Below are positions 1 to 64,000 of a stretch of DNA of 64,000 nucleotides, in pieces. Within the stretch, counting starts at the first letter, position 1. Every line of letters begins with the position of its first letter. Both the position numbers and the translations under genes were made by a program. The notes beneath the pieces are model-generated. The model was not told the origin of the DNA. It worked only from the letters and a program-made list of their open reading frames with translations, and did no database searches. The DNA is from Macrostomum lignano (lineage: Eukaryota), in the NCBI GenBank assembly GCA_002269645.1, contig NIVC01000225.1, forward strand, positions 222,678 to 286,677. Reading direction: 5' to 3'.

Positions 1-1950
<1,950 letters not shown>

Positions 1951-1970
<20 letters not shown>

Positions 1971-2251
1971 ACTTAGTAACTGACTGAGAAAACTAAATAA
2001 TAACTTTTGACTTGGGAAAGATTAGCCAGAATACGAAACCGGCCTTTCAACGCTTGGCGTCAAGCAAAAAGGCGCTTAACTCGAAATTCAGGTGCTGCCC
2101 AGTCCGAATTCGAATGTCTGTGGCCAGGGCTGCAGCAGTGAGAAGGGCCGCCGCTAATCCCAGTCCATCAAGTCTCCGCGGCGTTAATTCTCCATTAGTG
2201 GCGAGTCGCACCTGTCTTTGGGGCGCCCGTCAGCCATGTCAGCCTCGGCAG
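1951..2251 (+). mobile_element. Microsatellite-embedded dispersed repeat, copy 1 (extends to ~2580 before a (GTCA)n tract)
   Basis: 301 bp nearly identical to 25401-25701 (constant offset 23450; about 3 substitutions seen). Both copies follow an (ACTA)n tract. Mobility is inferred. Confidence 0.7.
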
Positions 2252-6838: not shown

Positions 6839-7387
6839 TCTGGCGGTGACAATGTCCCTCCACTCAAGGACTGCCCTTCACCTCCCTTTGCTTCTGTTAA
6901 CCGAGCAATGACTGCGCTATAAAATAAACTCTATGAGGCTATTTTACCTGTGCATGACTCGGACTGCGCGATCTCTTTCATTCTTTAATATTCGACAGCA
7001 CAGCACAGCTGGCCTGCACTGATGCTGGCTGACCTTCCGCCGGCAGCTGCAGATCTGCTGCATCAGCCAATACGGTGGGAGACCCGCGCGGTGTGCAAAT
7101 CCGCGGTAATCCTCCATGCAGACGGGCAGTTGGATAATCCTTCGCTTCCAGCAGCGGGATTAGCGTCCCCAGCAATTAGTCTGACAGAGCTCGGGCCCAG
7201 TCAACCCCCCAACCACCTGTGTGTCATCGAATTTCGGCGCTCGTTCAGCCGCAGTCTGAAGAAAGGGGGCGGCAAAATTCGTCAAAGCTGTTATTTCGAA
7301 AATTGCTGCCTTCGAGGACAAGCAAAACGGAGTCGAAGTGTTGTTGTGTATTTTTTCTGCAGATAACTGCAGAGGCTCGGGTGAGAA

Positions 7388-11780: not shown

Positions 11781-12049
11781 TTACCGACTTTCCAAGGAAT
11801 CTCATCTAGACAGCTGAAAATTGAATCCCACTTTGAGCCGTGAGCACGGCAATGCCAATTTTGTCGGAGCGATGGGATTGGCTGCGCCAGGGCTTCTCTT
11901 ATCCCGGATGCCAGAGGATAAATAAGCTGCAGACCGGTGACCAGCTGCCCGCTTCTGCATCCGCCCGACAGCGCAGTCTCTCCAGCCGGCCCGACCGAAC
12001 AGGCAAATTTGACTCAAATCTGAACTCGACGACTCGCCAGCACCGCGTC

Positions 12050-16295: not shown

Positions 16296-16499
16296 AGCTT
16301 AGCAAAATGACTGCAGACTCAAATTGCGCGCTTCTGTCATGCGTTCTGAGTCAGGCGTCCCGCACCATCCGTCCCGATTTATAGGGGACATTTCTTCGGC
16401 TTGCAACGCAAGAACTTTTAAAGCAGTTAAGATCCTCTCTGCATAAGCTTTAGGAGAATTTATGATCAATTTGACGCAAACAGATATGGTCGACGAGCT

Positions 16500-16690
16500 G
16501 ATGAAATTTGGAGGCTTGGCAAGGCCGCACTGAGGTGCAGTGCTGATTGGCGCACAGGGGTGTACTGAATACACTAGAGCTTATGGGAAAAATCCGACCT
16601 ACTGGCAGAACCCTTGATTATCTTGACGGTCCGGAGGGTTGGCGACTTGTGTGCCTGCATTGCTCCGTTCCGGCGCAGCAAAAGAATTGC
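16500..16690 (+). repeat. Dispersed repeat, related to 52508-52745 and its mirror ~55495-55732
   Basis: Shared stretches atgaaatttggaggcttggcaagg...tgctgattggcgcacagg...tgtactgaatacact...aatccgacct and gctccgttccggcgcagc, with scattered differences. Confidence 0.75.
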
Positions 16691-45404: not shown

Positions 45405-45420
45405 ACGCTTCACTTCAGCC

Positions 45421-45825
45421 CACTTCAGCCCATCAAAAGTATCTACAGTAATCTTTTTTCTTTTTGAATGCTTTCATTTTTTAACTTGCTGCTTGAAAAT
45501 AAATTAAGAGAGTTTCCAAAGGACTTTACTGACAGTAGCAGTAAACGAGTTTGCGTTAAACATTATTAAAATTTTTTCACGCGTCATGAACGATTGTGTA
45601 AAATGAATTGTAACATTATGTGTTACGTCTAAAGAAGTAGTTGAACAGCCTCATTTATTAAGCAAAAATGAAAACTATACTGGTTTATGCTGTACTACTG
45701 GGAAATATATTTATTCTCCTGATATGTTGATTGACAGAATAAAATATCAGACGAATAATATGTTGCCAAGCGCTATGTATAATTATATAAAGATGAGTCC
45801 AGGAACAGTATTACTTTATTATTTT
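45421..45825 (+). repeat. 405-bp segment A, present three times: direct copies at 45421-45825 and 54392-54796, inverted copy at 53444-53848
   Basis: Constant offset 8971 between the direct copies; begins cacttcagcccatcaaaag. Confidence 0.92.
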
Positions 45826-45945
45826 ATGTCGCTTATGTTGCGACATATGTTGCTTATGTCGCTTAAAGTGCGCCAGGGTGTACAAATATATAAAGTTTAA
45901 CAACACTTTTTAAAATAAATTGCATACATATACTGCCTATTTCAG

Positions 45946-47949
45946 ATGACCACTTGGGTGAAGAAAAAGAGAACAGGAGAGAGGTTGCTACTAAGTGCCA
46001 TTAGGGATACCAGTTCCAGCTCTCATGACGAGGAAGAGGGCATTTGTATGAAAAAATCATCATTGCCCAGTGGAGCAGTTTGTTCTAAATGGACATTGGG
46101 TAGTCAACCTGAGGAAGGAGATAAAAATCATCAGGAGGATAGTAATAACAATTCGCCATCTGAATCCGTCTCCTCCGATTCAGAGACTGACGACTATGAC
46201 GACCATGAATCTGATGTAGATCTGAGTGAGGCTTTGAAAGAATGGGCAATATCCGACAACATCCCACAGGCCTCTTTGCGACGTCTTCTGGCTGTTCTGC
46301 GCAAGAAAGACCCATCCCTTCCTATTGACCCGAGAACGCTGCTTGACTCTCCCCAGGTTGTATTAGGAGTTAAACACGTTGATCCAGGTAGCTATTATCA
46401 TTTTGGGCTCCTGGATGGGATTAAAAGGCTACTTGACGATGTGGGCTTTGAGAATAATGTCAACTTGAACCTGGTTTTAAACATCGATGGTGTACCACTT
46501 TTTTCATCGACTGTGGACGGCTTTTGGGTGATTCTAGCCGCATTTCGTGAAATTCGGAATTCTGTCTTTGTCGTTGGAATCTACCACGGCAAGGCAAAGC
46601 CTCAGAGTGCCGAGGATCTTCTCACGGATACTATTGAAGAGTTAAAGACGCTGGAGCAAAATGATTTGGAGATTCGACCCGGTGTGAAAATTCTCCTTGC
46701 GTGTGTTTGCTGCGACACACCCGCACGCGCTTTTGTCAAGAATGTCAAAGGCCACTCTGGCTACTATGGTTGTGACCGTTGCATTGCAAAAGGTATATAC
46801 ATTTGTAACCGTGTTGCTTTCTCTGAGAATGGTACTCTCCGAAGTGACGCCACCTTTCGCGACAGAACTCAACCGGAGCATCACCACGGACCGAGCCCCT
46901 TTGAATCCTTGTCTATTGACATGGTGGCTCAGTTTCCACACGACATGTTGCACCTTATCTGCAAAGGAGTGACACTGAAGCTGCTGGAAGTATTAAGCAA
47001 TGGTCCAAATAAGTACAGACTCGGCCAGAATGAGAAAAGGTACTTTGATCAGCTTATAAAAGAGACCTGCAAGGTTCTTCCTTGTGACTTTGTTCGAAAG
47101 GTGAGCCCTATTCGCCACCTTCACAAATGGAAGGCGACTGAATTGCGACTTTTTACAGTGTACATCATTCCGTTCGTCATCCCCAAGGTTGTACGTGATT
47201 CAAAGCTACAAACTATATTCATGACGTATTTCATCGCTATCTACATCATGTGCTGCGAAAGGAAACAATACCAAGGAGCGCAGAGCGTTGAATACATTCG
47301 CCGCCTTGTGTCATATATGCACGATCTCCTTCGCGATGCTCTCGGAAATGCATTTTTCACATACAATATTCACAACCTTCAGCACCTAGTTGATGACTTC
47401 AACCGGTTTGGTCCAATAGACACATTTAGCAACTTTAAGTTTGAGAACTTCTTGAGATTCATCAAGAAGAAGATTCGATCGCCCAGTCAACCACTGAATC
47501 AGATTGTCAAGCGAATACATGAGAGTGGACAGTTTCTTGGGCAGCGTCCTGTATCCCTATTGGGAATAAAGTCCCTGACACCCTTGCAACCCATCATTCG
47601 TGATGAGGGTGTAGCTTACCGGCGACTCGTACTGAATGATGTCAACACCATCCTGAAGAGGAAATCTCCGGATTCATTCGTCTTAACCTCTGATCACAAA
47701 GTCTTCAAAGTTTCTCATTTTGTGAAGGAGGGCGACGATATCAGGGCCATTGGCCGGCTCTTTTGTAGCCACGACAACTACTTTCTATTGCCGTTGCTGT
47801 CCATGGATTTAGACATTTTCAAAGTGTCTGAATTGTCGCGCTCGGTTTCTGTCGTACCTGTTGAACATATCATGTGCAAAATGTTCCTCTTTCCAGACGA
47901 CGGTGGCCACCAGTTGGCCATACCACTTGCTCATACTTTCCGTCAGTGA
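45946..47949 (+). CDS. EnSpm/CACTA-like transposase (Tnp2-like), 667 aa
   Basis: Motifs LNIDGVPLF, CCDTPARAFVKNVKGHSGYYGCDRC, DMLHLICKGV, KWKATELRLF and YNIHNLQHLVDD...FGPIDTFSNFKFENFL, recognised from family knowledge. Preceded by a ttcag acceptor, so an upstream exon may be missing. Confidence 0.85.
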   Translation: MTTWVKKKRTGERLLLSAIRDTSSSSHDEEEGICMKKSSLPSGAVCSKWTLGSQPEEGDKNHQEDSNNNSPSESVSSDSETDDYDDHESDVDLSEALKEWAISDNIPQASLRRLLAVLRKKDPSLPIDPRTLLDSPQVVLGVKHVDPGSYYHFGLLDGIKRLLDDVGFENNVNLNLVLNIDGVPLFSSTVDGFWVILAAFREIRNSVFVVGIYHGKAKPQSAEDLLTDTIEELKTLEQNDLEIRPGVKILLACVCCDTPARAFVKNVKGHSGYYGCDRCIAKGIYICNRVAFSENGTLRSDATFRDRTQPEHHHGPSPFESLSIDMVAQFPHDMLHLICKGVTLKLLEVLSNGPNKYRLGQNEKRYFDQLIKETCKVLPCDFVRKVSPIRHLHKWKATELRLFTVYIIPFVIPKVVRDSKLQTIFMTYFIAIYIMCCERKQYQGAQSVEYIRRLVSYMHDLLRDALGNAFFTYNIHNLQHLVDDFNRFGPIDTFSNFKFENFLRFIKKKIRSPSQPLNQIVKRIHESGQFLGQRPVSLLGIKSLTPLQPIIRDEGVAYRRLVLNDVNTILKRKSPDSFVLTSDHKVFKVSHFVKEGDDIRAIGRLFCSHDNYFLLPLLSMDLDIFKVSELSRSVSVVPVEHIMCKMFLFPDDGGHQLAIPLAHTFRQ

Positions 47950-48668
47950 GACAGAGCTTACTTTTTTAACATACTGCAAAGGTTTGATGTGTCTGCATTC
48001 AGAAGCAAATGCTATTCTTTAAACTTTAATCATGATACTTTTCTTTAGCTGTTATAATTTTGTACGTAAATTTATTTTAAGGTTCTAATAATATGTTATT
48101 TTCTTTAATTACGAGCTAGATTCTGTTTCAAAATATTCTACTCATGTTTGAACTTGCAACTTATAGGCTTTTCTGTAAGCGTGTGGCAGCCTTGGACGTA
48201 GATCAACCAGTCGATGCAAAAAATTGAAGCATAGCAGATTGTTTAGAATCTTCAGCGTATACATATAACAGTAGTAATAGCAAAATTAATAATAATAATA
48301 ACAATTTCTTAGCATCAAACCGTCCAGGCCTGACAAGCGTAGCCAATTAAACATACTACTACTGTAATTTCGCCTCCTCAAAGTATAATTAATAAAATTA
48401 CTCGTCGCAGTATAATATGGCCGTATTTTTGGCAACTTATTTGGTACTAAAATACATCAAAGCTGCTCTGTTCATCAATTATGTAGAAATCTCAAAATAC
48501 AAGTATTGCAATAGTAGATTCATGAATCTGTAATGTTATAGAAAAGAGCTGTAATAAAATCAGCGTAGATAAGATTATTTAATTTACTGCAGTTTTATAT
48601 ACTAATAGAACATTACAACCTTTTTTCATGCATTTGAAGCTCTGAAACACCTCCAGTGTATCACAATT

Positions 48669-50521
48669 ATGAACACTGCAAAGTATCACCTAGTAAGCTT
48701 CGACGATGGCGCTCAAATTGTGCTGGACAGTTGGCTGTTCCGGGATGAAGATGGCAATGTCTTCTGCCTCCTCCCCAAGACAACCAAAGCTACTCAATGT
48801 ATGCGCAACAAAACTGAACCACACCCATCCTGGAGGGAATTCAAGGTGTCGGAACAGCTCATGTCTAGTGGTACGTTTTTAATGCTCTCTTCATGTCGAA
48901 CAGTGCTAGTAATATAGTAGTATAATAGTATATTTAGATACAATGGTGAATCTATTGGGTAGAGTCAATGTTGCCGTCATTTTTGCCATGCTGTACTCCT
49001 TGAGCTCCCCGCAGCTCTCGACATCGAGTTGAACGCCCTGTGGAAGTCCACAACACACACAGACAAAGGTCGATTGTGGTATGGGAAACCATACACACTG
49101 AAGGCTGGCACGACTCAACCTAAAAGCGCATGTATTTTTCGTAAATATGATTGCAGATTTTGCCTTACCCTTTCAGATAATCTGAACTTTCTCACTTATC
49201 GGCTGAAGCGATTGGAAGAAAAGAATAGTTTGAGTGAGACAGAAGTTGAGAGGAAACGACAAAGGCCGGCAGTAGAGAGGCTGGTTGATGGCTTTAGGAC
49301 ATCGTCGATTCCTGCTTCATCTTCCACTAGATCCAAAAAGACATCGAACATGCCACCGTCGTCTTCGGCTTCGGTTGTCGTATCTGAGCTTGCGTCACCA
49401 CCTCCGCCTCCAGTTTTTCAACTATCGCCTTCACCACCTCAAGCATCAGTTACCGTACACGATACATTCGAGAGCCAATCTGTGCTGGAATCTGCTACAC
49501 AGGATCCTGACTTGAGGAGAAAGAATGAAACTGCCAGTTGCAACCGTCACTGCTGTCACATGGAGAGTACATTGCCTTTTAATTTGATTTCATCTGACTT
49601 TACTCTGACAGTTTCAGTTTTTTGTATTGTATTGCGCTCGCGTGATACATGTCTCTACTCTGTTCTAGTGGTTATTTTACTACCTATTTGTAAATTCATG
49701 CCAGTATAAACAAATGCATGCGTTTGTATTGTTACTGCAGAGTGGCTGGCGAAGCTCTTTACCGAAATGAAGGAAATGAAGGAAGAGATCTGAGCGTTAA
49801 GGTGTGGAAATACTACTGATGGCAATGGGATGTTGCACCAGTTGCCCATGAGCAGTGTAAACGGGCTCCTGTCCTTCGCCGATGAGATAGCCACATGTAC
49901 GGAAAAGAAGTCTGTCTTGGTGAGAGAAAATTTATAATTTTCTTACGTATGATCAGCTTCCTTTTTATCTACGAGCTCGTATGTACTTATTATTTAGTTG
50001 CTTATTTTCACATGTATTCCTGTACCTTTGCCGTATTCGTGCTACCTGCACGTATCGATCACTAGTCCTACCAGTAGCTTGCAAAAATCTGAATTTTAGA
50101 TTCACTACCTGTCCGGCTTCGCTGATGATGGCGTCAGTATCAGCCGAGTGACGACCACTCTGTTGAAGAAAATCGCCCTGCCATCTATGTTTAGTATGTT
50201 TACAACAACTGGCCGGCAGGATTCACGCATATTTCCCATCGGGCTTACTGCGGCCATAGAAAGTAAGTATGTTCGAACATGTGAAATCAACCTCTGTATG
50301 TATAGTCGCTCATTGTGACGCATGAAATACGTGTATATACACTGTACGTCATACTAATTGGCTCATCACTTTGTTTCACAGGAGTCATTCATAATAACAA
50401 GCGATTGAGATCTCGTTCACGAGGCGTTGGAGCGCAACATTTTGTGGCCGAGTCCTTGAAGCATATCAAACTCAAGGAGAAGAAGCGCGTAGAGACTGCG
50501 GATGACGTGAGGGAAACTTAG
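48669..50521 (+). pseudogene. Spliced accessory ORF of the transposon (DUF4806-like), with an in-frame TGA at 49791-49793
   Basis: N-terminal YHLVSFDDGAQIVLDSWL...CLLP motif. Candidate exons 48669-48870, 49177-?, 49741-49919, 50100-~50262 and ~50382-50521. C-terminal LPMSSVNGLLSF...IHYLSGF segment. The family call is from memory of animal EnSpm second ORFs. Confidence 0.55.
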
Positions 50522-51883
50522 ACTTCGCTGTTGCTCTTCCTTCATTTTGGCTTCCTTCATTTGGCTTCTTCTTTCATCTCTCATGATGCCAGCTCATGCT
50601 GGAGAACTATAGTAGCTTGAATATTTTGTAAAGTTCAATCATGCAGCTGTTATCATACCTTTCATAAATCCATCAATTTTGACCATCTTACGAGCGTACA
50701 TGGATATCATGTAACTGTATTGAAAATGGAGCTTGAAAATTGGTTCTATGATTGATTTTGCATTACCGAGTTCTAAGACATAAATTATAAAATGGGTAAC
50801 TTTAAGCATAAATAAAAAATTTAGACTTTAGTTGTGTAAATAATAAAAAAGCAACAATTAGATTTGAACGCATTTAGCCAGAGTCCGTAGGTATAGCGTT
50901 ACCTGCGCCAAAAAATTTTCCAGAATGTGAGCACGTCTTCAAGTGTTCTCTATGAACAACATGCAGCTATAGCTACACACAATCATTTAAATTTATTACG
51001 CTTGTGTTGCTTCCTTTTTGTTCAGTAAAACCAAATATTGTTTTGAACTGTCGTTCGTGCACATGTCTACTGTTCTATTGTTTTTCACTACACTGTTTTG
51101 TATTATTTTACACTATGATACTATCTCTCATTTCCACTTCGATTGTTTCCAATAGCTAATATTCTAATATAGTATTCCATAGTATTCCATAGTATTCCAT
51201 ACTTCTAGTATTGCAAATTTCTACTCCGTAGCTTTTTATTATTGCTCTATACTTTCTATTATTCTACAGGCTACTAGCTCTGTTGCTATGCTCGCATTTG
51301 TCTTCATCCTTGGATTTGTTCCATGCCACTGTTTTCTACATTAACTATATTCTGTTTTGTTTGTACTAACTTTTTGGCGCTATTTTCCGTTCTCCATCTT
51401 TTAATCTAATTTTTTTACCGTTCCTTTTCATGAATTTTCATATGCTAATATAAGAATATACTCGTAAATTACAATTTGTACCCGGTATTTCAAGCGTGGT
51501 TAGTGTGCATTACTTATATCCACACACATAATTCAATAAGGTTGACTTCAGAATGCAGAGATAACTTTCAATCATAAAGCTAGTAACATTTATTTTCTTG
51601 AAACTTCATACAAGTCATTTTGTACATTGAAAAAGCCATTTTTATACGGTAAAATTTCAGTAAATTTTTTACGTCAAAACAACGTCACAAATCTAGGTCA
51701 AAATTACGTAAAAAATATCGACAGAATTGACGTCATTTCGACGTCATAGTTTGACCGATTTTCAACGTCATTTTGACGTCGCGCAACGTCACTTTGCTAC
51801 CCGGGCAACCGTGTAACCATGCACAGTCGCCAGAGTGTAAATCAATCCGTGCTTTTCGGTGAGGAGGCATCCAACGAATTGAC

Positions 51884-51916
<33 letters not shown>

Positions 51917-52029
51917 CTTTTCTATTTCTAAGAAGCCGGGGCACCACACTGCTTGAAGAGCATCGATCGAGGCATCTGCCTTCAGTCCCGCGCTGCGAAG
52001 CTGTACTGTGTTCAGTTGGATGCTGTTGT

Positions 52030-52390
52030 TGAGGTTGCACATATAGCGGATCCGTACAGAACAGGTTTCGGCCCCATCGCAGCACAGTGGTGCAGATCCT
52101 GGCTCTTCGTCCTGGAGTCGCGGATTTGTCAGTAGATCCCGATTGAGATATCTTAATAGATTTCAAGAAGGCCTTCAACGACCGGTCGTCAGAGCCGCGT
52201 GCTTTCAATGGTGCTTCTTCGAGACATTCTCTTGGGTCCTTCTACTAAAGTAGTCCTTGTGCGCTAGCACGGCGTTCCTGCTTCTTCTGGTGTTTGACTG
52301 GGTGCTTCAGAATGCTCTTCCTACCAACGACGATGGCCGTCTGCTGTGCGACGCGTGGGTCGACGCCAACCGGAGAGGCTCTGACTTCGT
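52030..52390 (+). pseudogene. Decayed non-LTR retrotransposon reverse-transcriptase fragment (mirror ~55850-56210 on -)
   Basis: Frameshifted motifs in RT order: FRPHRSTVVQILALR, IDFKKAF, FLLLLVFDWVLQNALP. Confidence 0.65.
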
Positions 52391-55300
52391 TGGTCACTGG
52401 CCTTTATCCAGGCGGAGCTTCTGGACCTTCAACAGGTGGCACCAGCTCACAGGGGACTATGGACATATCTACATGTATATGTTTTTAGCTGATGTTAGAC
52501 ACATGCTGATGAAATTTGGAGGCTTGGCAAGGCTGCAATGAGGCGCAGTGCTGATTGGCGCACAGGTGTGTACTGAATACACTGGCGCTTATGGGAGAAA
52601 TCCGACCTTCTGGCAGAATTGTTGAATATCTCAAAGATCGGAGGGTTGACGAATTGATAAGTGTTTTTGAAGGTGCGCAACAAAAAGTTCGCCCATGTTC
52701 CTGAATTTTGTGCCGCCTGCGTTGCTCCGTTCCGGCGCAGCTAAAATATTTCTGGAGGATGACTCGTAGAACTACTGTTAATATAGGGCTTTGGGAAAGT
52801 TTACAGAATCCGCTGAATGGATGCAGATGCAGTTTACAGAAACGGTCCTTCATAGCAATTTCCCATCGGAAGTGAATTTTCGTTGGTCAGAAACTTATTA
52901 TGTAAGATTATTTTCAGTAAGGTTTCAGTAAATTATGAAACCCTTTCTAGACCTCGGCTTGCTGCCACACATCTAGCAGTGCATTTAAAGAAAGCTTTCA
53001 TGATTTTGCAGTTTAGCAGTAAATAACTGCCTAGTCATAACGAGAAATTAAATCTGCAGGTAAAGACATCGCAGAATGTTTTGAAAATTTCCAGTAAAAC
53101 CCATTTATGTGAAGCCATATTTGTGAAGTATGTGCAGACTGCTTTCTGCGCGACTCCCGAACTCACGATAATGGATGCGGCCAGCCCCAGTGAGTGTGGG
53201 AGCGAATGTACGAGCTAAGAAGACCTGCAAAGGCCGAGAGTGCATGTGCGAGAGCTGCAAGTGCTAGGACGGAAACTGCAAGAACGGCAGGTGCGAGAGC
53301 TGCAGGTGCGAGGGCTGCTAGTGTGCCGCAATCACGTCGTGACGTCACTGACAAAGGGCGCAGTCAGGAACGGATGCGATCTACGAGTATGTGCATGTAC
53401 ACTCATACATTGGGATACAATTGCAAGTGCTGAGCCAATTTCAAAAATAATAAAGTAATACTGTTCCTGGACTCATCTTTATATAATTATACATAGCGCT
53501 TGGCAACATATTATTCGTCTGATATTTTATTCTGTCAATCAACATATCAGGAGAATAAATATATTTCCCAGTAGTACAGCATAAACCAGTATAGTTTTCA
53601 TTTTTGCTTAATAAATGAGGCTGTTCAACTACTTCTTTAGACGTAACACATAATGTTACAATTCATTTTACACAATCGTTCATGACGCGTGAAAAATTTT
53701 TAATAATGTTTAACGCAAACTCGTTTACTGCTACTGTCAGTAAAGTCCTTTGGAAACTCTCTTAATTTATTTTCAAGCAGCAAGTTAAAAAATGAAAGCA
53801 TTCAAAAAGAAAAAAGATTACTGTAGATACTTTTGATGGGCTGAAGTGTGTTAATATTTACCATGTTGGCTGAAGTTTTGGCTTAAACTTTTAAGGTGTT
53901 TCATTATTTACAATTTTTTATCTTTGAGTACAGTCAGTCTGATAGCAAGTATATTTTAATAAATAGTATTGACTTTATTTTTTATCACTGAGCTCTAATT
54001 CTGTTATTCTGCATGGCACTCTTCGCTCGTCCAGCAGCCCCAATTGATTGGGGGCGTCGCCAAGATGAGTGCCTGCCTGCGGCGCCAAGATGAGTGCTAA
54101 CAACAGCGATTGCCAAAATAATGTAAGGAATTCAGCTCTGCAGAATTCTTGGCTCTGTAACCTCACTATAAAATCTATGGCGACGCCCCCAATCAATTGG
54201 GGCTGCTGGACGAGCGAAGAGTGCCATGCAGAATAACAGAATTAGAGCTCAGTGATAAAAAATAAAGTCAATACTATTTATTAAAATATACTTGCTATCA
54301 GACTGACTGTACTCAAAGATAAAAAATTGTAAATAATGAAACACCTTAAAAGTTTAAGCCAAAACTTCAGCCAACATGGTAAATATTAACACACTTCAGC
54401 CCATCAAAAGTATCTACAGTAATCTTTTTTCTTTTTGAATGCTTTCATTTTTTAACTTGCTGCTTGAAAATAAATTAAGAGAGTTTCCAAAGGACTTTAC
54501 TGACAGTAGCAGTAAACGAGTTTGCGTTAAACATTATTAAAAATTTTTCACGCGTCATGAACGATTGTGTAAAATGAATTGTAACATTATGTGTTACGTC
54601 TAAAGAAGTAGTTGAACAGCCTCATTTATTAAGCAAAAATGAAAACTATACTGGTTTATGCTGTACTACTGGGAAATATATTTATTCTCCTGATATGTTG
54701 ATTGACAGAATAAAATATCAGACGAATAATATGTTGCCAAGCGCTATGTATAATTATATAAAGATGAGTCCAGGAACAGTATTACTTTATTATTTTTGAA
54801 ATTGGCTCAGCACTTGCAATTGTATCCCAATGTATGAGTGTACATGCACATACTCGTAGATCGCATCCGTTCCTGACTGCGCCCTTTGTCAGTGACGTCA
54901 CGACGTGATTGCGGCACACTAGCAGCCCTCGCACCTGCAGCTCTCGCACCTGCCGTTCTTGCAGTTTCCGTCCTAGCACTTGCAGCTCTCGCACATGCAC
55001 TCTCGGCCTTTGCAGGTCTTCTTAGCTCGTACATTCGCTCCCACACTCACTGGGGCTGGCCGCATCCATTATCGTGAGTTCGGGAGTCGCGCAGAAAGCA
55101 GTCTGCACATACTTCACAAATATGGCTTCACATAAATGGGTTTTACTGGAAATTTTCAAAACATTCTGCGATGTCTTTACCTGCAGATTTAATTTCTCGT
55201 TATGACTAGGCAGTTATTTACTGCTAAACTGCAAAATCATGAAAGCTTTCTTTAAATGCACTGCTAGATGTGTGGCAGCAAGCCGAGGTCTAGAAAGGGT

Positions 55301-56323
55301 TTCATAATTTACTGAAACCTTACTGAAAATAATCTTACATAATAAGTTTCTGACCAACGAAAATTCACTTCCGATGGGAAATTGCTATGAAGGACCGTTT
55401 CTGTAAACTGCATCTGCATCCATTCAGCGGATTCTGTAAACTTTCCCAAAGCCCTATATTAACAGTAGTTCTACGAGTCATCCTCCAGAAATATTTTAGC
55501 TGCGCCGGAACGGAGCAACGCAGGCGGCACAAAATTCAGGAACATGGGCGAACTTTTTGTTGCGCACCTTCAAAAACACTTATCAATTCGTCAACCCTCC
55601 GATCTTTGAGATATTCAACAATTCTGCCAGAAGGTCGGATTTCTCCCATAAGCGCCAGTGTATTCAGTACACACCTGTGCGCCAATCAGCACTGCGCCTC
55701 ATTGCAGCCTTGCCAAGCCTCCAAATTTCATCAGCATGTGTCTAACATCAGCTAAAAACATATACATGTAGATATGTCCATAGTCCCCTGTGAGCTGGTG
55801 CCACCTGTTGAAGGTCCAGAAGCTCCGCCTGGATAAAGGCCAGTGACCAACGAAGTCAGAGCCTCTCCGGTTGGCGTCGACCCACGCGTCGCACAGCAGA
55901 CGGCCATCGTCGTTGGTAGGAAGAGCATTCTGAAGCACCCAGTCAAACACCAGAAGAAGCAGGAACGCCGTGCTAGCGCACAAGGACTACTTTAGTAGAA
56001 GGACCCAAGAGAATGTCTCGAAGAAGCACCATTGAAAGCACGCGGCTCTGACGACCGGTCGTTGAAGGCCTTCTTGAAATCTATTAAGATATCTCAATCG
56101 GGATCTACTGACAAATCCGCGACTCCAGGACGAAGAGCCAGGATCTGCACCACTGTGCTGCGATGGGGCCGAAACCTGTTCTGTACGGATCCGCTATATG
56201 TGCAACCTCAACAACAGCATCCAACTGAACACAGTACAGCTTCGCAGCGCGGGACTGAAGGCAGATGCCTCGATCGATGCTCTTCAAGCAGTGTGGTGCC
56301 CCGGCTTCTTAGAAATAGAAAAG

Positions 56324-56358
<35 letters not shown>

Positions 56359-57720
56359 GTCAATTCGTTGGATGCCTCCTCACCGAAAAGCACGGATTGA
56401 TTTACACTCTGGCGACTGTGCATGGTTACACGGTTGCCCGGGTAGCAAAGTGACGTTGCGCGACGTCAAAATGACGTTGAAAATCGGTCAAACTATGACG
56501 TCGAAATGACGTCAATTCTGTCGATATTTTTTACGTAATTTTGACCTAGATTTGTGACGTTGTTTTGACGTAAAAAATTTACTGAAATTTTACCGTATAA
56601 AAATGGCTTTTTCAATGTACAAAATGACTTGTATGAAGTTTCAAGAAAATAAATGTTACTAGCTTTATGATTGAAAGTTATCTCTGCATTCTGAAGTCAA
56701 CCTTATTGAATTATGTGTGTGGATATAAGTAATGCACACTAACCACGCTTGAAATACCGGGTACAAATTGTAATTTACGAGTATATTCTTATATTAGCAT
56801 ATGAAAATTCATGAAAAGGAACGGTAAAAAAATTAGATTAAAAGATGGAGAACGGAAAATAGCGCCAAAAAGTTAGTACAAACAAAACAGAATATAGTTA
56901 ATGTAGAAAACAGTGGCATGGAACAAATCCAAGGATGAAGACAAATGCGAGCATAGCAACAGAGCTAGTAGCCTGTAGAATAATAGAAAGTATAGAGCAA
57001 TAATAAAAAGCTACGGAGTAGAAATTTGCAATACTAGAAGTATGGAATACTATGGAATACTATGGAATACTATATTAGAATATTAGCTATTGGAAACAAT
57101 CGAAGTGGAAATGAGAGATAGTATCATAGTGTAAAATAATACAAAACAGTGTAGTGAAAAACAATAGAACAGTAGACATGTGCACGAACGACAGTTCAAA
57201 ACAATATTTGGTTTTACTGAACAAAAAGGAAGCAACACAAGCGTAATAAATTTAAATGATTGTGTGTAGCTATAGCTGCATGTTGTTCATAGAGAACACT
57301 TGAAGACGTGCTCACATTCTGGAAAATTTTTTGGCGCAGGTAACGCTATACCTACGGACTCTGGCTAAATGCGTTCAAATCTAATTGTTGCTTTTTTATT
57401 ATTTACACAACTAAAGTCTAAATTTTTTATTTATGCTTAAAGTTACCCATTTTATAATTTATGTCTTAGAACTCGGTAATGCAAAATCAATCATAGAACC
57501 AATTTTCAAGCTCCATTTTCAATACAGTTACATGATATCCATGTACGCTCGTAAGATGGTCAAAATTGATGGATTTATGAAAGGTATGATAACAGCTGCA
57601 TGATTGAACTTTACAAAATATTCAAGCTACTATAGTTCTCCAGCATGAGCTGGCATCATGAGAGATGAAAGAAGAAGCCAAATGAAGGAAGCCAAAATGA
57701 AGGAAGAGCAACAGCGAAGT

Positions 57721-59573
57721 CTAAGTTTCCCTCACGTCATCCGCAGTCTCTACGCGCTTCTTCTCCTTGAGTTTGATATGCTTCAAGGACTCGGCCACAA
57801 AATGTTGCGCTCCAACGCCTCGTGAACGAGATCTCAATCGCTTGTTATTATGAATGACTCCTGTGAAACAAAGTGATGAGCCAATTAGTATGACGTACAG
57901 TGTATATACACGTATTTCATGCGTCACAATGAGCGACTATACATACAGAGGTTGATTTCACATGTTCGAACATACTTACTTTCTATGGCCGCAGTAAGCC
58001 CGATGGGAAATATGCGTGAATCCTGCCGGCCAGTTGTTGTAAACATACTAAACATAGATGGCAGGGCGATTTTCTTCAACAGAGTGGTCGTCACTCGGCT
58101 GATACTGACGCCATCATCAGCGAAGCCGGACAGGTAGTGAATCTAAAATTCAGATTTTTGCAAGCTACTGGTAGGACTAGTGATCGATACGTGCAGGTAG
58201 CACGAATACGGCAAAGGTACAGGAATACATGTGAAAATAAGCAACTAAATAATAAGTACATACGAGCTCGTAGATAAAAAGGAAGCTGATCATACGTAAG
58301 AAAATTATAAATTTTCTCTCACCAAGACAGACTTCTTTTCCGTACATGTGGCTATCTCATCGGCGAAGGACAGGAGCCCGTTTACACTGCTCATGGGCAA
58401 CTGGTGCAACATCCCATTGCCATCAGTAGTATTTCCACACCTTAACGCTCAGATCTCTTCCTTCATTTCCTTCATTTCGGTAAAGAGCTTCGCCAGCCAC
58501 TCTGCAGTAACAATACAAACGCATGCATTTGTTTATACTGGCATGAATTTACAAATAGGTAGTAAAATAACCACTAGAACAGAGTAGAGACATGTATCAC
58601 GCGAGCGCAATACAATACAAAAAACTGAAACTGTCAGAGTAAAGTCAGATGAAATCAAATTAAAAGGCAATGTACTCTCCATGTGACAGCAGTGACGGTT
58701 GCAACTGGCAGTTTCATTCTTTCTCCTCAAGTCAGGATCCTGTGTAGCAGATTCCAGCACAGATTGGCTCTCGAATGTATCGTGTACGGTAACTGATGCT
58801 TGAGGTGGTGAAGGCGATAGTTGAAAAACTGGAGGCGGAGGTGGTGACGCAAGCTCAGATACGACAACCGAAGCCGAAGACGACGGTGGCATGTTCGATG
58901 TCTTTTTGGATCTAGTGGAAGATGAAGCAGGAATCGACGATGTCCTAAAGCCATCAACCAGCCTCTCTACTGCCGGCCTTTGTCGTTTCCTCTCAACTTC
59001 TGTCTCACTCAAACTATTCTTTTCTTCCAATCGCTTCAGCCGATAAGTGAGAAAGTTCAGATTATCTGAAAGGGTAAGGCAAAATCTGCAATCATATTTA
59101 CGAAAAATACATGCGCTTTTAGGTTGAGTCGTGCCAGCCTTCAGTGTGTATGGTTTCCCATACCACAATCGACCTTTGTCTGTGTGTGTTGTGGACTTCC
59201 ACAGGGCGTTCAACTCGATGTCGAGAGCTGCGGGGAGCTCAAGGAGTACAGCATGGCAAAAATGACGGCAACATTGACTCTACCCAATAGATTCACCATT
59301 GTATCTAAATATACTATTATACTACTATATTACTAGCACTGTTCGACATGAAGAGAGCATTAAAAACGTACCACTAGACATGAGCTGTTCCGACACCTTG
59401 AATTCCCTCCAGGATGGGTGTGGTTCAGTTTTGTTGCGCATACATTGAGTAGCTTTGGTTGTCTTGGGGAGGAGGCAGAAGACATTGCCATCTTCATCCC
59501 GGAACAGCCAACTGTCCAGCACAATTTGAGCGCCATCGTCGAAGCTTACTAGGTGATACTTTGCAGTGTTCAT
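57721..59573 (-). pseudogene. Mirror copy of the accessory (DUF4806-like) ORF
   Basis: Identical translations in the ORF track; same premature stop. Confidence 0.55.
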
Positions 59574-60292
59574 AATTGTGATACACTGGAGGTGTTTCAG
59601 AGCTTCAAATGCATGAAAAAAGGTTGTAATGTTCTATTAGTATATAAAACTGCAGTAAATTAAATAATCTTATCTACGCTGATTTTATTACAGCTCTTTT
59701 CTATAACATTACAGATTCATGAATCTACTATTGCAATACTTGTATTTTGAGATTTCTACATAATTGATGAACAGAGCAGCTTTGATGTATTTTAGTACCA
59801 AATAAGTTGCCAAAAATACGGCCATATTATACTGCGACGAGTAATTTTATTAATTATACTTTGAGGAGGCGAAATTACAGTAGTAGTATGTTTAATTGGC
59901 TACGCTTGTCAGGCCTGGACGGTTTGATGCTAAGAAATTGTTATTATTATTATTAATTTTGCTATTACTACTGTTATATGTATACGCTGAAGATTCTAAA
60001 CAATCTGCTATGCTTCAATTTTTTGCATCGACTGGTTGATCTACGTCCAAGGCTGCCACACGCTTACAGAAAAGCCTATAAGTTGCAAGTTCAAACATGA
60101 GTAGAATATTTTGAAACAGAATCTAGCTCGTAATTAAAGAAAATAACATATTATTAGAACCTTAAAATAAATTTACGTACAAAATTATAACAGCTAAAGA
60201 AAAGTATCATGATTAAAGTTTAAAGAATAGCATTTGCTTCTGAATGCAGACACATCAAACCTTTGCAGTATGTTAAAAAAGTAAGCTCTGTC

Positions 60293-62287
60293 TCACTGAC
60301 GGAAAGTATGAGCAAGTGGTATGGCCAACTGGTGGCCACCGTCGTCTGGAAAGAGGAACATTTTGCACATGATATGTTCAACAGGTACGACAGAAACCGA
60401 GCGCGACAATTCAGACACTTTGAAAATGTCTAAATCCATGGACAGCAACGGCAATAGAAAGTAGTTGTCGTGGCTACAAAAGAGCCGGCCAATGGCCCTG
60501 ATATCGTCGCCCTCCTTCACAAAATGAGAAACTTTGAAGACTTTGTGATCAGAGGTTAAGACGAATGAATCCGGAGATTTCCTCTTCAGGATGGTGTTGA
60601 CATCATTCAGTACGAGTCGCCGGTAAGCTACACCCTCATCACGAATGATGGGTTGCAAGGGTGTCAGGGACTTTATTCCCAATAGGGATACAGGACGCTG
60701 CCCAAGAAACTGTCCACTCTCATGTATTCGCTTGACAATCTGATTCAGTGGTTGACTGGGCGATCGAATCTTCTTCTTGATGAATCTCAAGAAGTTCTCA
60801 AACTTAAAGTTGCTAAATGTGTCTATTGGACCAAACCGGTTGAAGTCATCAACTAGGTGCTGAAGGTTGTGAATATTGTATGTGAAAAATGCATTTCCGA
60901 GAGCATCGCGAAGGAGATCGTGCATATATGACACAAGGCGGCGAATGTATTCAACGCTCTGCGCTCCTTGGTATTGTTTCCTTTCGCAGCACATGATGTA
61001 GATAGCGATGAAATACGTCATGAATATAGTTTGTAGCTTTGAATCACGTACAACCTTGGGGATGACGAACGGAATGATGTACACTGTAAAAAGTCGCAAT
61101 TCAGTCGCCTTCCATTTGTGAAGGTGGCGAATAGGGCTCACCTTTCGAACAAAGTCACAAGGAAGAACCTTGCAGGTCTCTTTTATAAGCTGATCAAAGT
61201 ACCTTTTCTCATTCTGGCCGAGTCTGTACTTATTTGGACCATTGCTTAATACTTCCAGCAGCTTCAGTGTCACTCCTTTGCAGATAAGGTGCAACATGTC
61301 GTGTGGAAACTGAGCCACCATGTCAATAGACAAGGATTCAAAGGGGCTCGGTCCGTGGTGATGCTCCGGTTGAGTTCTGTCGCGAAAGGTGGCGTCACTT
61401 CGGAGAGTACCATTCTCAGAGAAAGCAACACGGTTACAAATGTATATACCTTTTGCAATGCAACGGTCACAACCATAGTAGCCAGAGTGGCCTTTGACAT
61501 TCTTGACAAAAGCGCGTGCGGGTGTGTCGCAGCAAACACACGCAAGGAGAATTTTCACACCGGGTCGAATCTCCAAATCATTTTGCTCCAGCGTCTTTAA
61601 CTCTTCAATAGTATCCGTGAGAAGATCCTCGGCACTCTGAGGCTTTGCCTTGCCGTGGTAGATTCCAACGACAAAGACAGAATTCCGAATTTCACGAAAT
61701 GCGGCTAGAATCACCCAAAAGCCGTCCACAGTCGATGAAAAAAGTGGTACACCATCGATGTTTAAAACCAGGTTCAAGTTGACATTATTCTCAAAGCCCA
61801 CATCGTCAAGTAGCCTTTTAATCCCATCCAGGAGCCCAAAATGATAATAGCTACCTGGATCAACGTGTTTAACTCCTAATACAACCTGGGGAGAGTCAAG
61901 CAGCGTTCTCGGGTCAATAGGAAGGGATGGGTCTTTCTTGCGCAGAACAGCCAGAAGACGTCGCAAAGAGGCCTGTGGGATGTTGTCGGATATTGCCCAT
62001 TCTTTCAAAGCCTCACTCAGATCTACATCAGATTCATGGTCGTCATAGTCGTCAGTCTCTGAATCGGAGGAGACGGATTCAGATGGCGAATTGTTATTAC
62101 TATCCTCCTGATGATTTTTATCTCCTTCCTCAGGTTGACTACCCAATGTCCATTTAGAACAAACTGCTCCACTGGGCAATGATGATTTTTTCATACAAAT
62201 GCCCTCTTCCTCGTCATGAGAGCTGGAACTGGTATCCCTAATGGCACTTAGTAGCAACCTCTCTCCTGTTCTCTTTTCTTCACCCAA
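60293..62287 (-). CDS. EnSpm/CACTA-like transposase, mirror copy
   Basis: Identical protein from RTGERLL onward. A 1-bp shorter A-run puts the upstream ATG out of frame. Confidence 0.82.
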   Translation of the reverse strand: MGEEKRTGERLLLSAIRDTSSSSHDEEEGICMKKSSLPSGAVCSKWTLGSQPEEGDKNHQEDSNNNSPSESVSSDSETDDYDDHESDVDLSEALKEWAISDNIPQASLRRLLAVLRKKDPSLPIDPRTLLDSPQVVLGVKHVDPGSYYHFGLLDGIKRLLDDVGFENNVNLNLVLNIDGVPLFSSTVDGFWVILAAFREIRNSVFVVGIYHGKAKPQSAEDLLTDTIEELKTLEQNDLEIRPGVKILLACVCCDTPARAFVKNVKGHSGYYGCDRCIAKGIYICNRVAFSENGTLRSDATFRDRTQPEHHHGPSPFESLSIDMVAQFPHDMLHLICKGVTLKLLEVLSNGPNKYRLGQNEKRYFDQLIKETCKVLPCDFVRKVSPIRHLHKWKATELRLFTVYIIPFVIPKVVRDSKLQTIFMTYFIAIYIMCCERKQYQGAQSVEYIRRLVSYMHDLLRDALGNAFFTYNIHNLQHLVDDFNRFGPIDTFSNFKFENFLRFIKKKIRSPSQPLNQIVKRIHESGQFLGQRPVSLLGIKSLTPLQPIIRDEGVAYRRLVLNDVNTILKRKSPDSFVLTSDHKVFKVSHFVKEGDDIRAIGRLFCSHDNYFLLPLLSMDLDIFKVSELSRSVSVVPVEHIMCKMFLFPDDGGHQLAIPLAHTFRQ

Positions 62288-64000
62288 GTGGTCATCTGAA
62301 ATAGGCAGTATATGTATGCAATTTATTTTAAAAAGTGTTGTTAAACTTTATATATTTGTACACCCTGGCGCACTTTAAGCGACATAAGCACACAACCAGT
62401 GAGAGGCATTATTGCCCATTCCGCCGGCTCCCCTGAGCAGGCATACAAGCGCGGATACATATGCAGGCACACACTCACACAGGAGTGTACAGCCACCCTA
62501 ACTTTATTTTATTGTTAGGCATGTACACTTCACTGCGCCTTGGGGGTTTGGCTCTCAAGGCCATTAATTGCACAAGCAGAGCCAAGCCAAGATTCCAATT
62601 CAGCCACAAATTAATGTGACTACACTTGGAATTGAGCCTAGGTCACTGGCCCACCAGAGCAGCTGCGCTACCTCTGGGCTATGGCCCCCTGGTAGTACTC
62701 GTACAAGTTATTAAAGATTTAAATCAGTTAACCAAGAAACTCTAAATATTATATAAAATGCTAACATGAAATAGCTACATTTATAAATAATAGATAGACA
62801 GTATGCTTTGTATATATTAAAAACTCATGATAGGTGGCCCACTAAATATTTATCAAACCAAAACAAAAAATAGTAACTTCATATCAAGTATGCCTAATGT
62901 TTTTGTAGAGATGCTAGTAAATCTTGACCTTTCAAATTGCATCCTGAAGTGGAAATTTAGATATGATATTATTTCTTGTTTCTTCCTTTTATTTTGGGTT
63001 AAAAAATTGCATCCTGAAATTAGACCTTGGATGCAGTTTTGAATTCTAGTGCCAGCAAAAATTAGAACAGAATATCAATTTAGACTCATTAGGTTGATAC
63101 TGGTTTATTTAATAAACTGGCTTTACTAATAAGTTTTGTACATCCCAGGCTAGGCCTAAGACTGACACCAAAATCAAGCAGTTCTTTGTTGACTGATAGG
63201 TAAGAATTCAATTTCCATGCAATAATTATTCTGATAGGAATTATGCCTAACTCTAATCATTTGTAAATTTTAATCAGTGGAGTATTGTAGGGGCCTATAT
63301 AGTCCAATAATATTATTTATAATTCCTATGAATAAAAAATCACATACAGTACTGAATAAGAAATGAGATAAGGTAAAGTAGTATACGGAAAATTAGCAAC
63401 TTTAATAAAAGATTCTATAATTAAATTAGCTAATTATCATTAGTAGCTAGACCATTAGCTATGCTTTGCTATTGCATTTATCTCCTTCTAACATCAAACT
63501 TCTTATGGTATATTTAAGGCCGCCAAAATATAGATGTAAAATAAAATTCAGTCAAACAGAAAGATGCGTTGTATCACCGTGAAGTTTCATATACCTAGCT
63601 GCCTGACCCTGACACAGCTTAGTGAAAAAAACAACCCCCATTGATCGGCATGATTGAGCATGCAGCAAATTATTCAAAAATATACGATTTTAACGATACG
63701 TATTAACAAAATAAAACTGTAAAAAAACGAGCCTTACTTTTTCCCTTACTTTTTTTCAGTGTTATAAAAATCATTCAATCTACGTTATTATATAGTAATG
63801 CAGCATAGAAACGTCAAATTTTGGGTTCCATAATGACTTAAGTTTGACGTTGATTTTTCAACCTACTTTCAACGTATATTTTACGTTGCTTCTTTGCTAT
63901 TTTACAGGTATAATTGAGCTAGCCAAAATGATGACTACAAATGCATATTGACTCTGGCATCTAATTATGCAAAAATAAACTACAAAATCAACGAAGACGG

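What the first reader, a model, noticed from the sequence alone, without database searches (positions are those of the whole stretch)
45405..62390. 16.5-kb palindrome with a triplicated 405-bp segment, inserted into a minisatellite
Seen order: minisatellite, A(+), transposon(+), host DNA, A(-), B(-), 115-bp spacer starting with two minisatellite units, B(+), A(+), host DNA, transposon(-). The 8.2-kb arms differ only by two slippage-type indels that I could see. Knowledge: long near-perfect palindromes with short spacers are unstable, form cruciforms and, if transcribed through, make long hairpin dsRNA. Inference: a very recent inverted duplication by template switching or aberrant transposition. 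It could act as an siRNA/piRNA source silencing this EnSpm family. An assembly or amplification chimera remains possible.
Basis: partly seen in the sequence, partly recalled or inferred. Interest (0 to 1): 0.75.

Follow-up and report, generated by a model that had tools for sequence, protein, structure and literature searches.

The report
Recent fold-back inverted duplication at minisatellite
An 8.2-kb stretch carrying a transposase gene has been copied in reverse right next to itself, apparently when a break in a neighbouring minisatellite was repaired sloppily. It is a clean example of a known kind of mutation rather than a new kind of genetic element.

Summary
Arms 45851-54062 and 54178-62390 are reverse complements over 8.2 kb. 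They have no substitutions and two slippage indels (A5/A4 and (AC)15.5/16.5). A 115-nt spacer separates them. A third copy of a 405-nt segment lies at 45421-45825 and matches 404/405.

The junctions suggest a history. The ancestral order was minisatellite, S, [B-A-X-transposase gene], flank. An 8.66-kb block (45406-54062) was then inserted into the last two minisatellite units.

- The centre junction has 5-nt microhomology (CGCCA).
- The outer junction carries a 25-nt filler built from direct and inverted copies of the arm tip.
- The third junction has a 10-nt stutter.

This is the signature of fold-back priming from a broken end, followed by template switches and end joining (MMBIR/FoSTeS type). 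That mechanism is known from human, yeast and cancer genomes.

Transposase-catalysed joining is not supported, because the new junction shows no intact element end. The transposase is CACTA/EnSpm-like by transitive homology, but the element's ends could not be defined.

A silencing-hairpin role is untested and the geometry is unfavourable. The ORFs sit at the outer ends of the arms, with many poly(A) signals before the centre.

An amplification or long-read artefact cannot be excluded without reads (about 15-20%). Interest is modest.

The parts
42855..45405 (.). Minisatellite, unit CCTGCGGCGCCAAGATGAGTG repeated about 120 times. Its left part ends ...GCGCCAA at the insertion point.
   Evidence: TRF; sequence
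45406..45420 (+). Junction 1 filler. It consists of CGCTT (origin unknown) plus CACTTCAGCC, a 10-nt tandem 'stutter' copy of the first bases of A.
   Evidence: The stutter is explained by re-annealing on a 2-nt TG microhomology (inference).
45421..45825 (+). Third copy of segment A (405 nt). It is in direct orientation relative to the arm-R copy and matches 404/405, with the mismatch at 45572.
45826..45850 (+). Junction 2 filler (25 nt, ATGTCGCTTATGTTGCGACATATGT). It is made of a direct copy (TTATGTCGCTTA, counting 2 nt shared with A) and an inverted copy (GCGACATA) of the first 15 nt of arm L.
   Evidence: Only 37 of 20000 shuffles reach the longest match.
45851..54062 (+). Arm L, inferred to be the new, inverted copy. 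Its last 5 nt (CGCCA, 54058-54062) are microhomology with the minisatellite unit.
45946..47949 (+). Intact 667-aa ORF for a CACTA/EnSpm-like (Tnp2/DUF4218-related) transposase.
51885..51915 (+). (AC)15.5 microsatellite, one of the two differences between the arms. Its partner is (TG)16.5 at 56325-56357.
53444..53848 (-). Segment A, inverted copy inside arm L.
53849..54062 (-). Segment B, inverted copy at the inner end of arm L.
54063..54097 (+). The last 1.7 units of the minisatellite, forming the right side of the insertion point and the first part of the spacer.
54098..54177 (+). S, an 80-nt single-copy sequence between the minisatellite and arm R. It forms the rest of the spacer and of the inferred fold-back loop. 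It contains CACTA at 54164-54168.
54178..62390 (+). Arm R, inferred to be the original copy. It runs without a junction into the right flank.
54392..54796 (+). Segment A inside arm R, the inferred template for the third copy.
60293..62295 (-). Transposase gene copy in arm R. The ATG at 62295-62293 is put out of frame by the A4 run (62274-62277). The next in-frame ATG corresponds to residue 35.
62391..62401 (-). The 11 nt just beyond arm R, ending in CACTG when read on the minus strand. This is a possible but unproven end of the transposon. Base composition changes here.

Best explanation
This is a recent local rearrangement, not a functional device.

Inferred ancestral order: minisatellite, S, [B, A, X, transposase gene], flank.

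Inferred sequence of events:
1. A break or collapsed replication fork occurred in the last units of the GC-rich minisatellite.
2. The resected 3' end on the right-hand side folded back. It annealed through CGCCA/TGGCG about 111 nt away and primed synthesis on its own strand.
3. Synthesis continued for 8.2 kb, creating the inverted arm.
4. The growing end came off at 62390 and made a short snap-back filler from its own tip.
5. It then switched template to copy the 405-nt segment A and stuttered by 10 nt.
6. It was joined to the other broken minisatellite end.

This is a fold-back plus template-switching repair event of the MMBIR/FoSTeS type. Its first step matches 'local fold-back insertion at a DSB', but with a far longer synthesis tract.

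Shown directly: the anatomy, the microhomology, and the templated origin of the fillers. Inferred: the order of events, the polymerases involved, the initiating lesion, and that arm R is the parent copy.

Consequences: two copies of an apparently intact transposase gene in a tail-to-tail palindrome. The locus could be a recombination-prone or fragile site, although a 115-nt spacer should make it more stable than a spacerless palindrome (my own knowledge of the yeast inverted-Alu work).
For: - Arm identity. The arms have no substitutions and only two slippage indels.
- Which junctions are novel. Arm R runs on into unique flank with no filler, whereas arm L is bounded on both sides by novel junctions.
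- Site of insertion. Minisatellite sequence lies on both sides of the 8.66-kb block, and its natural end (variant unit followed by S) is retained to the right.
- Centre junction. It has 5-nt microhomology, CGCCA, extending to 8 of 9 nt. Sequenced human fold-back junctions have 2-8 bp of inverted microhomology next to a single-copy spacer (PMC3907307).
- Filler 2. It is built from 8-12-nt direct and inverted copies of the adjacent arm tip, with p of about 0.002 by shuffling.
- Filler 1. It is a 10-nt stutter of the start of A.
- Precedent for the repair route. Fold-back synthesis on one end with capture of the second end by NHEJ or alt-EJ has been shown in yeast (PMC11724301).
- Type of copy differences. 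All three are slippage-type, and break-induced replication strongly raises frameshift mutations along the synthesis tract (PMC3039667).
- Local context. About 40% of the first 45 kb is minisatellite arrays, a setting expected to be prone to breaks and fork stalling.
Against: - No reads, depth or second assembly could be consulted, so the existence of the structure in the organism is unverified.
- The source organism and other copies of the element were not found. There is therefore no empty-site or ancestral allele to confirm polarity.
- The fold-back insertions documented in yeast are 5-34 bp, not 8 kb.
- Human fold-back duplications end in terminal deletions or translocations, whereas here both flanks are kept.
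- The outer arm end falls within 11 nt of a possible transposon tip (CACTG), and the inner end within 14 nt of a CACTA. A pure fork-collapse model leaves the outer coincidence unexplained.
- Slippage-only differences are also what long-read consensus errors look like.
Confidence: 0.62

Rival explanations
1. The structure is an artefact. It would be a chimeric molecule or read, from whole-genome-amplification template switching or from a long-read fold-back read, that the assembler incorporated. The true locus would then be minisatellite, S, arm R, flank.
For: - WGA produces abundant local palindromic chimeras, and assemblies built from such reads contain false inverted duplications (PMC6218980).
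- ONT genomic DNA has about 0.6% fold-back reads, defined as a return within 200 bp on the opposite strand (PMC12870357). The centre junction, with its 115-nt offset, meets that definition.
- All differences between copies lie in homopolymer or dinucleotide runs, as consensus errors do.
Against: - A simple fold-back read runs back along itself. This structure needs three junctions that bring the path back to the same minisatellite in the same orientation and on into the unique flank.
- The spacer contains no adapter-like sequence.
- The 25-nt templated filler and the 10-nt stutter show polymerase template switching, not ligation or mis-assembly. Phi29 polymerase could in principle produce them too.
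- HiFi data show virtually no fold-back reads.
Confidence: 0.17
2. The rearrangement was triggered by the transposon. One version has the transposase cutting or blocking at the element's 5' end, so that repair synthesis ran off or stalled there. Another has a nibbled, excised element captured in a nearby break. A third is alternative transposition followed by re-replication, as in maize Ac/Ds composite insertions.
For: - The outer arm end lies 11 nt inside a CACTG at a boundary in base composition.
- The inner arm end lies 14 nt from a CACTA.
- The transposase ORF is intact and keeps every invariant residue of its family, including candidate acidic residues D181, D257 and E399 or E500.
- The 8.66-kb block is flanked by CAA on both sides, and CACTA elements make 3-bp duplications (PMC4158355).
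- Alternative transposition is documented to create inverted duplications of transposon sequence (10.1101/2020.01.07.897926).
Against: - The novel junctions are not at intact element ends. One has a 25-nt filler and the other is a microhomology join.
- No second TIR or TSD for the element could be found. Beyond CACT, the two candidate ends share no similarity.
- The flanking CAA lies in a 21-nt tandem repeat, so a phase overlap of a few bases is unremarkable.
- Homology to related elements stops at the ORF, so whether the whole arm is transposon is unknown.
Confidence: 0.14
3. It is an old palindrome whose arms are kept identical by arm-to-arm gene conversion, as in sex-chromosome palindromes, and it may be retained for a function.
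For: Arm identity is effectively 100%. Conversion-maintained palindromes are known from established work on the primate Y chromosome and are mentioned in PMC6218980.
Against: - The third A copy lies outside the arms and is also 404/405 identical.
- The fragile junction fillers are intact.
- The only gene in the arms is a transposase.
- The spacer is only 115 nt.
Confidence: 0.04

Closest known systems
Fold-back inverted duplications with a single-copy spacer (human constitutional inv-dup; Hermetz et al. 2014, PMC3907307)
   Same: An inverted copy lies next to the original. They are separated by a non-duplicated spacer that corresponds to the fold-back loop. There is short inverted microhomology at the boundary between spacer and inversion (5 nt here, 2-8 bp there). 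Some junctions carry insertions.
   Different: The human cases are 10 kb to many Mb, with spacers of 0.7-70 kb. They end in terminal deletion, translocation or ring formation after a dicentric intermediate. Here the tract is 8.2 kb, the spacer is 115 nt, and both original flanks are kept, so the break was repaired at both ends.
Local fold-back templated insertions at double-strand breaks (yeast; Yu et al. 2024, PMC11724301) and MMBIR/FoSTeS complex rearrangements
   Same: A broken end folds back on microhomology next to the break. Polymerase synthesis follows. [quoted passage not shown] Further microhomology-mediated template switches give paired pieces from one locus in inverted orientation.
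   Different: The documented yeast fold-back insertions are mostly 5-34 bp. Here synthesis ran for 8.2 kb and then 405 nt, which requires processive BIR-like synthesis.
Composite insertions from alternative transposition of maize Ac/Ds, and Mu killer (10.1101/2020.01.07.897926; PMC3440606)
   Same: There is an inverted duplication of transposase-gene sequence beside or within the element's own locus. In maize, such loci are transcribed into hairpin RNA and silence the family.
   Different: The maize loci have junctions at exact element termini with 8-bp TSDs (composite insertions). They also have a flanking promoter that reads a roughly 4-kb hairpin (Mu killer). Here the junctions are of repair type, the ORFs lie at the far ends of 8-kb arms, and neither transcription nor small RNAs are known.
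WGA palindromes and long-read fold-back artefacts (PMC6218980; PMC12870357)
   Same: A local inverted repeat with a return point within 200 bp. The differences between copies are confined to low-complexity runs.
   Different: The structure has three junctions, returns collinearly to unique flank, has a non-palindromic spacer, and carries an extra direct copy of A.

Membership tests
Fold-back inverted duplication | Inverted copy adjacent to the original, with a single-copy spacer between them | tested here: met
   The arms are separated by 115 nt. The 80-nt S part is unique in the window.
Fold-back inverted duplication | Short inverted microhomology at the boundary between spacer and inversion | tested here: met
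   CGCCA (5 nt), extending to 8 of 9 nt, between the minisatellite unit and the start of arm R. Human junctions have 2-8 bp.
Fold-back inverted duplication | Loss of sequence distal to the break (terminal deletion, dicentric intermediate or BFB) | tested here: not met
   Both flanks are present and collinear: the minisatellite on the left and unique sequence 62391-64000 on the right.
MMBIR/FoSTeS-type complex rearrangement | Two or more junctions in cis that join nearby segments, with microhomology and/or templated insertions | tested here: met
   There are three junctions, and all templates lie within 17 kb. Microhomology is 5 nt and 2 nt. There is a 10-nt stutter and a 25-nt filler templated from the adjacent arm tip.
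MMBIR/FoSTeS-type complex rearrangement | Origin in replication or BIR (dependence on polymerase and helicase) | not testable with these tools
   Slippage-only differences between copies are compatible with it (PMC3039667) but are not specific to it.
Alternative-transposition composite insertion | Novel junctions at exact transposon termini | tested here: not met
   The junction at 45850/45851 has a 25-nt filler. The arm stops 11 nt short of the only CACTG candidate end. The inner junction is a microhomology join.
Alternative-transposition composite insertion | Target-site duplication flanking the inserted block | tested here: inconclusive
   CAA lies on both sides of 45406-54062, but within a 21-nt tandem repeat where the number of units lost or gained is unknown.
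CACTA/EnSpm transposon | Transposase of the Tnp2 (PF02992)/DUF4218 kind | tested here: inconclusive
   The ORF itself gives only a sub-threshold DUF4218 hit (19.8 bits, cutoff 27). Among its homologues, which match with E-values down to 1e-130, 14 of 27 hit DUF4218 and 5 of 27 hit Transposase_21. Membership therefore rests on transitive homology.
CACTA/EnSpm transposon | TIRs beginning CACTA/CACTG at both ends, and a 3-bp TSD | tested here: not met
   There is one CACTG at 62401-62397 (minus strand). No matching second TIR was found. The candidate CACTA at 54164 shares nothing beyond CACT, and the flanking triplets differ (CCT against AGA). The definition is taken from PMC4158355.
Mu killer-type silencing locus | Inverted duplication of transposase-gene sequence | tested here: met
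   The complete ORF is present in both arms.
Mu killer-type silencing locus | Read-through transcript forming a hairpin, homologous small RNAs, and silencing of the family | not testable with these tools
   No expression data were available. The geometry is unfavourable: the ORFs are at the outer ends, and 10 AATAAA/ATTAAA hexamers lie between the stop codon and the centre.
Long-read fold-back or WGA palindrome artefact | Sequence turns back on itself within about 200 bp on the opposite strand | tested here: met
   The centre junction has a 115-nt offset. The criterion is from PMC12870357.
Long-read fold-back or WGA palindrome artefact | No support from independent native reads; fold at the read midpoint; halved depth | not testable with these tools
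   No reads were available. The collinear return to unique flank through two further junctions argues against a simple fold-back read.

The most novel reading that the evidence does not exclude
The palindrome is real and acts as an animal counterpart of maize Mu killer or the Ac composite insertions. On this reading, it is a newly arisen inverted duplication of an active CACTA-like transposon that is read through into a long hairpin RNA, feeds the siRNA/piRNA pathway and silences its own family. The rearrangement might also have been provoked by transposase activity at the element's end, since the arm ends 11 nt from a CACTG.
Probability: 0.07. Interest if true: 0.65.

Novelty: new member of a known kind. 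Interest (0 to 1): 0.3.

Why it matters
If the structure is real, it is an unusually well-preserved germline record of fold-back and template-switch repair in a non-model animal. All three junctions are intact, the fillers are readable, and the tract is hundreds of times longer than the fold-back insertions characterised in yeast. It would show that such repair can create kilobase palindromes without loss of a chromosome end. It would also show that minisatellites can seed these events.

The event also duplicates an intact transposase gene head-away-from-head. That is raw material for hairpin-RNA silencing or for further instability.

If the structure is an artefact, it marks a mis-assembly that should be corrected. 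In either case it does not define a new class of element.

Tried and rejected
- **Looking for the same locus or other copies of the element.**
  - The exact-protein look-up found nothing.
  - The best protein homologues are only 40% identical.
  - Two homologue loci, L001 and L002, share nothing with the arm beyond the ORF and show no usable TIRs.
- **Defining the transposon ends.**
  - Mismatch searches, local alignment and an enumeration of every CACTR site gave no second TIR and no TSD.
- **Looking for genes in region X (47950-53443).**
  - There were no Pfam hits for seven ORFs and no tblastx similarity.
  - Whether X is host DNA or transposon-internal sequence is therefore unresolved.
- **Identifying the organism.**
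  - A Na/K-ATPase exon gave hits of at most 75% identity across animals.
  - The VWA ORF gave no hits.
  - There are no tRNA or Rfam hits in the window.
  - The profile of the transposase family found no solved structure.
- **Explanations rejected.**
  - A foldback-type or long-TIR transposon: the arms are unique 8-kb sequence with a 115-nt middle, there are no terminal tandem repeats and no TSD.
  - Mis-joined inversion haplotypes: an inversion allele would join B' to the right flank, not to the minisatellite plus S.
  - A missed SMRTbell adapter: the spacer contains no adapter-like sequence and is not symmetric.


Full report
**1. The observation**

The inverted repeat is real.
- The repeat finder reports arms 45965-51915/56327-62277 and 51885-54062/54178-56355 at 100% complementarity, plus 45851-45967/62274-62390.
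- A global alignment of 45851-54062 against the reverse complement of 54178-62390 (8212 against 8213 nt) finds no substitution and two indels. One is an A in the run at 45964-45968 (A5 against T4 at 62274-62277). The other is one AC unit in the microsatellite at 51885-51915, against 56325-56357.
- The 405-nt segment A occurs at 45421-45825 (+), 53444-53848 (-) and 54392-54796 (+). The two arm copies are identical. The outside copy differs at 45572, where A4T6 replaces A5T5.
- The 115-nt spacer (54063-54177) starts with 35 nt of the minisatellite that fills 42855-45405 (21-nt unit, about 120 copies). This includes the 25-nt variant unit also seen at 45308-45351. The remaining 80 nt (S) occur once in the window.

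**2. Anatomy and polarity**

Arm R continues at 62391 into unique sequence with no junction features.

Arm L is bounded by two novel junctions.
- *Outer side.* The sequence reads: minisatellite ...GCGCCAA | CGCTT | CACTTCAGCC | A (which begins CACTTCAGCCCATC...). At the far end of A it continues ...TTATTTT | ATGTCGCTTATGTTGCGACATATGT | TGCTTATGTCGCTTAAAG... (arm L).
  - The 10 nt before A are a tandem stutter of A's first 10 nt.
  - The 25-nt filler contains TTATGTCGCTTA, a direct copy of 45854-45865 that shares 2 nt with the end of A. It also contains GCGACATA, an inverted copy of 45855-45862.
  - Only 37 of 20000 shuffles of the filler reach its longest match to the first 60 nt of the arm.
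- *Inner side.* Arm L ends ...GGGGGCGTCGCCA and runs into AGATGAGTG... . [quoted passage not shown] The join therefore lies in 5 nt of microhomology (CGCCA), or 8 of 9 nt with one mismatch.

The simplest reading has two parts.
- The ancestral order was minisatellite, S, [54178-62390], flank.
- The block 45406-54062 (8.66 kb) is an insertion into the last two minisatellite units. It consists of filler, A(+), filler, and the reverse complement of 54178-62390.

**3. Content of the arms**

- The only clear gene is a 667-aa ORF at 45946-47949. In arm R its ATG is out of frame because of the A4 run, and the next in-frame ATG corresponds to residue 35.
- The ORF gives a sub-threshold DUF4218 hit.
- It has 117 homologues with E-values down to 1e-130 and at most 40% identity. 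They come from many animals, including aphids, fishes, Lingula, a sea cucumber, a scallop and spiders, and from metagenomes.
- Of 27 aligned family members, 14 hit DUF4218 and 5 hit Transposase_21/Tnp2. The window copy keeps all invariant residues.
- It is therefore a CACTA/EnSpm-like transposase by transitive homology.

The element itself could not be delimited.
- There is a CACTG 11 nt beyond the outer end of arm R (62401-62397, minus strand), at a shift in base composition. There is a CACTA 14 nt before the inner end (54164).
- Beyond CACT these two ends share no TIR. The flanking triplets differ (CCT against AGA). No other candidate end fits.
- Region X (47950-53443) has no Pfam hits and no similarity to two homologue loci. 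It contains an (AC)n run, a 15-nt tandem repeat and a 153-nt dispersed repeat also present at 16497-16649.

**4. Mechanism**

The junction signatures are those of polymerase template switching during break repair. I infer the following sequence.
1. A break or fork collapse occurs in the minisatellite.
2. After 5' resection, the 3' end of the right-hand side folds back and pairs TGGCG with CGCCA about 111 nt away.
3. It copies its own strand for 8.2 kb.
4. The end dissociates at 62390 and adds a snap-back filler from its own tip.
5. It re-primes with 2-nt microhomology (AA) to copy A.
6. It slips back once on TG, duplicating 10 nt.
7. It is joined to the left minisatellite end with 5 extra nucleotides.

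Each element of this model has precedent.
- Human fold-back inverted duplications have single-copy spacers and 2-8 bp of inverted microhomology (PMC3907307).
- Fold-back insertions at yeast DSBs use Pol delta on one end and NHEJ or alt-EJ capture of the other. Paired inverted pieces arise there by microhomology-mediated template switching (PMC11724301).
- Break-induced synthesis has a strong frameshift bias (PMC3039667). This would account for differences confined to A5/A4, (AC)n and A4T6/A5T5.

What is unusual is the combination of a kilobase-scale tract with two-ended repair that keeps both flanks. The surrounding 45 kb is roughly 40% minisatellite arrays, a plausible break-prone context.

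**5. Rivals**

- *Artefact.* WGA makes local palindromes that enter assemblies (PMC6218980). ONT genomic DNA contains about 0.6% fold-back reads, defined by a return within 200 bp (PMC12870357). The centre junction alone would fit that definition, and low-complexity differences look like consensus errors. Against this, three junctions return the path collinearly to unique flank, and there is no adapter-like sequence. I cannot exclude it without reads (about 0.17).
- *Transposase-driven event.* The closeness of both arm ends to CACTR motifs, the intact ORF and the flanking CAA are suggestive. However, alternative-transposition products have exact termini and TSDs, which the novel junctions here lack (about 0.14, including 'transposase merely provided a block or nick').
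- *Old conversion-maintained palindrome.* This is unlikely because the third A copy, outside the arms, is also almost identical (about 0.04).

**6. Age**

This is inference, and the mutation rate is assumed. With no substitutions in 8.2 kb between the arms, and 1 in 405 for the third A copy, the event is recent. At 5e-9 per site per generation, it would be on the order of 10^4 generations or fewer, if there has been no gene conversion.

**7. Function**

A hairpin-RNA or silencing role like Mu killer (PMC3440606) or the Ac composite insertions is possible in principle but untested.
- The two ORFs sit at the outer ends of the arms and point toward the centre.
- Ten AATAAA/ATTAAA hexamers lie between the stop codon and the centre.
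- A hairpin covering the transposase would therefore need about 16 kb of read-through.

**8. Verdict**

Recent template-switch duplication into a minisatellite: yes. Aberrant transposition: not supported. Silencing role: untested.
- This is a new example of a known kind of rearrangement, of modest interest, and it depends on verification with reads.

Noticed in passing
window 1-1985 and 2581-2877: A roughly 2-kb (CTAA)n microsatellite (about 496 units, 93% matches) lies at the start of the window. It is followed by a perfect (GTCA)74 array.
   Followed up: no
window 3082-45405: Minisatellite density is extraordinary. At least 25 distinct arrays with periods of 9-48 nt were found, for example 7387-9427 (17-mer x115), 9944-11781 (20-mer x92), 19851-21204 (25-mer x54) and 42855-45405 (21-mer x120). 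Together they make up roughly 40% of the first 45 kb, and many lie inside introns of the ATPase gene. This looks like a subtelomere-like or recombination-prone context.
   Followed up: partly
window 19313-19810 and 21872-22387 (minus strand): Exons of a P-type Na+/K+-ATPase alpha-subunit-like gene (Pfam PF00689 in the hits). It is at most 75% identical to any database protein, so it is either a divergent paralogue or comes from a poorly sampled animal lineage.
   Followed up: partly
window 35260-39495 (minus strand): A cluster of large exons encoding von Willebrand factor type A domains (PF00092; E-values 5e-38, 5e-31 and 9e-18). The 478-aa ORF, with Cys-rich N-terminal repeats, has no detectable homologue in the 5.8-billion-protein search.
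   Followed up: partly
window 52505-52656 and 16497-16649; also 62540-62690: A 153-nt dispersed repeat (87.6% identity between the two copies) lies inside the arms. A tRNA-like, SINE-looking sequence lies in the right flank. ARAGORN and Rfam call neither of them.
   Followed up: no
window 33841-34521 (minus strand): A 226-aa ORF ending in a long lysine/glutamate-rich (KEKKEKK) low-complexity tail that overlaps a 9-nt tandem repeat.
   Followed up: no
window 45964-45968 against 62274-62277: The A5 run in arm L, the inferred new copy, gives the transposase ORF an in-frame ATG at 45946. The A4 run in arm R, the inferred parent, puts that ATG out of frame. Either the parent mutated after the event, or the copying error lengthened the ORF, or one of the two runs is a consensus error.
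   Followed up: partly
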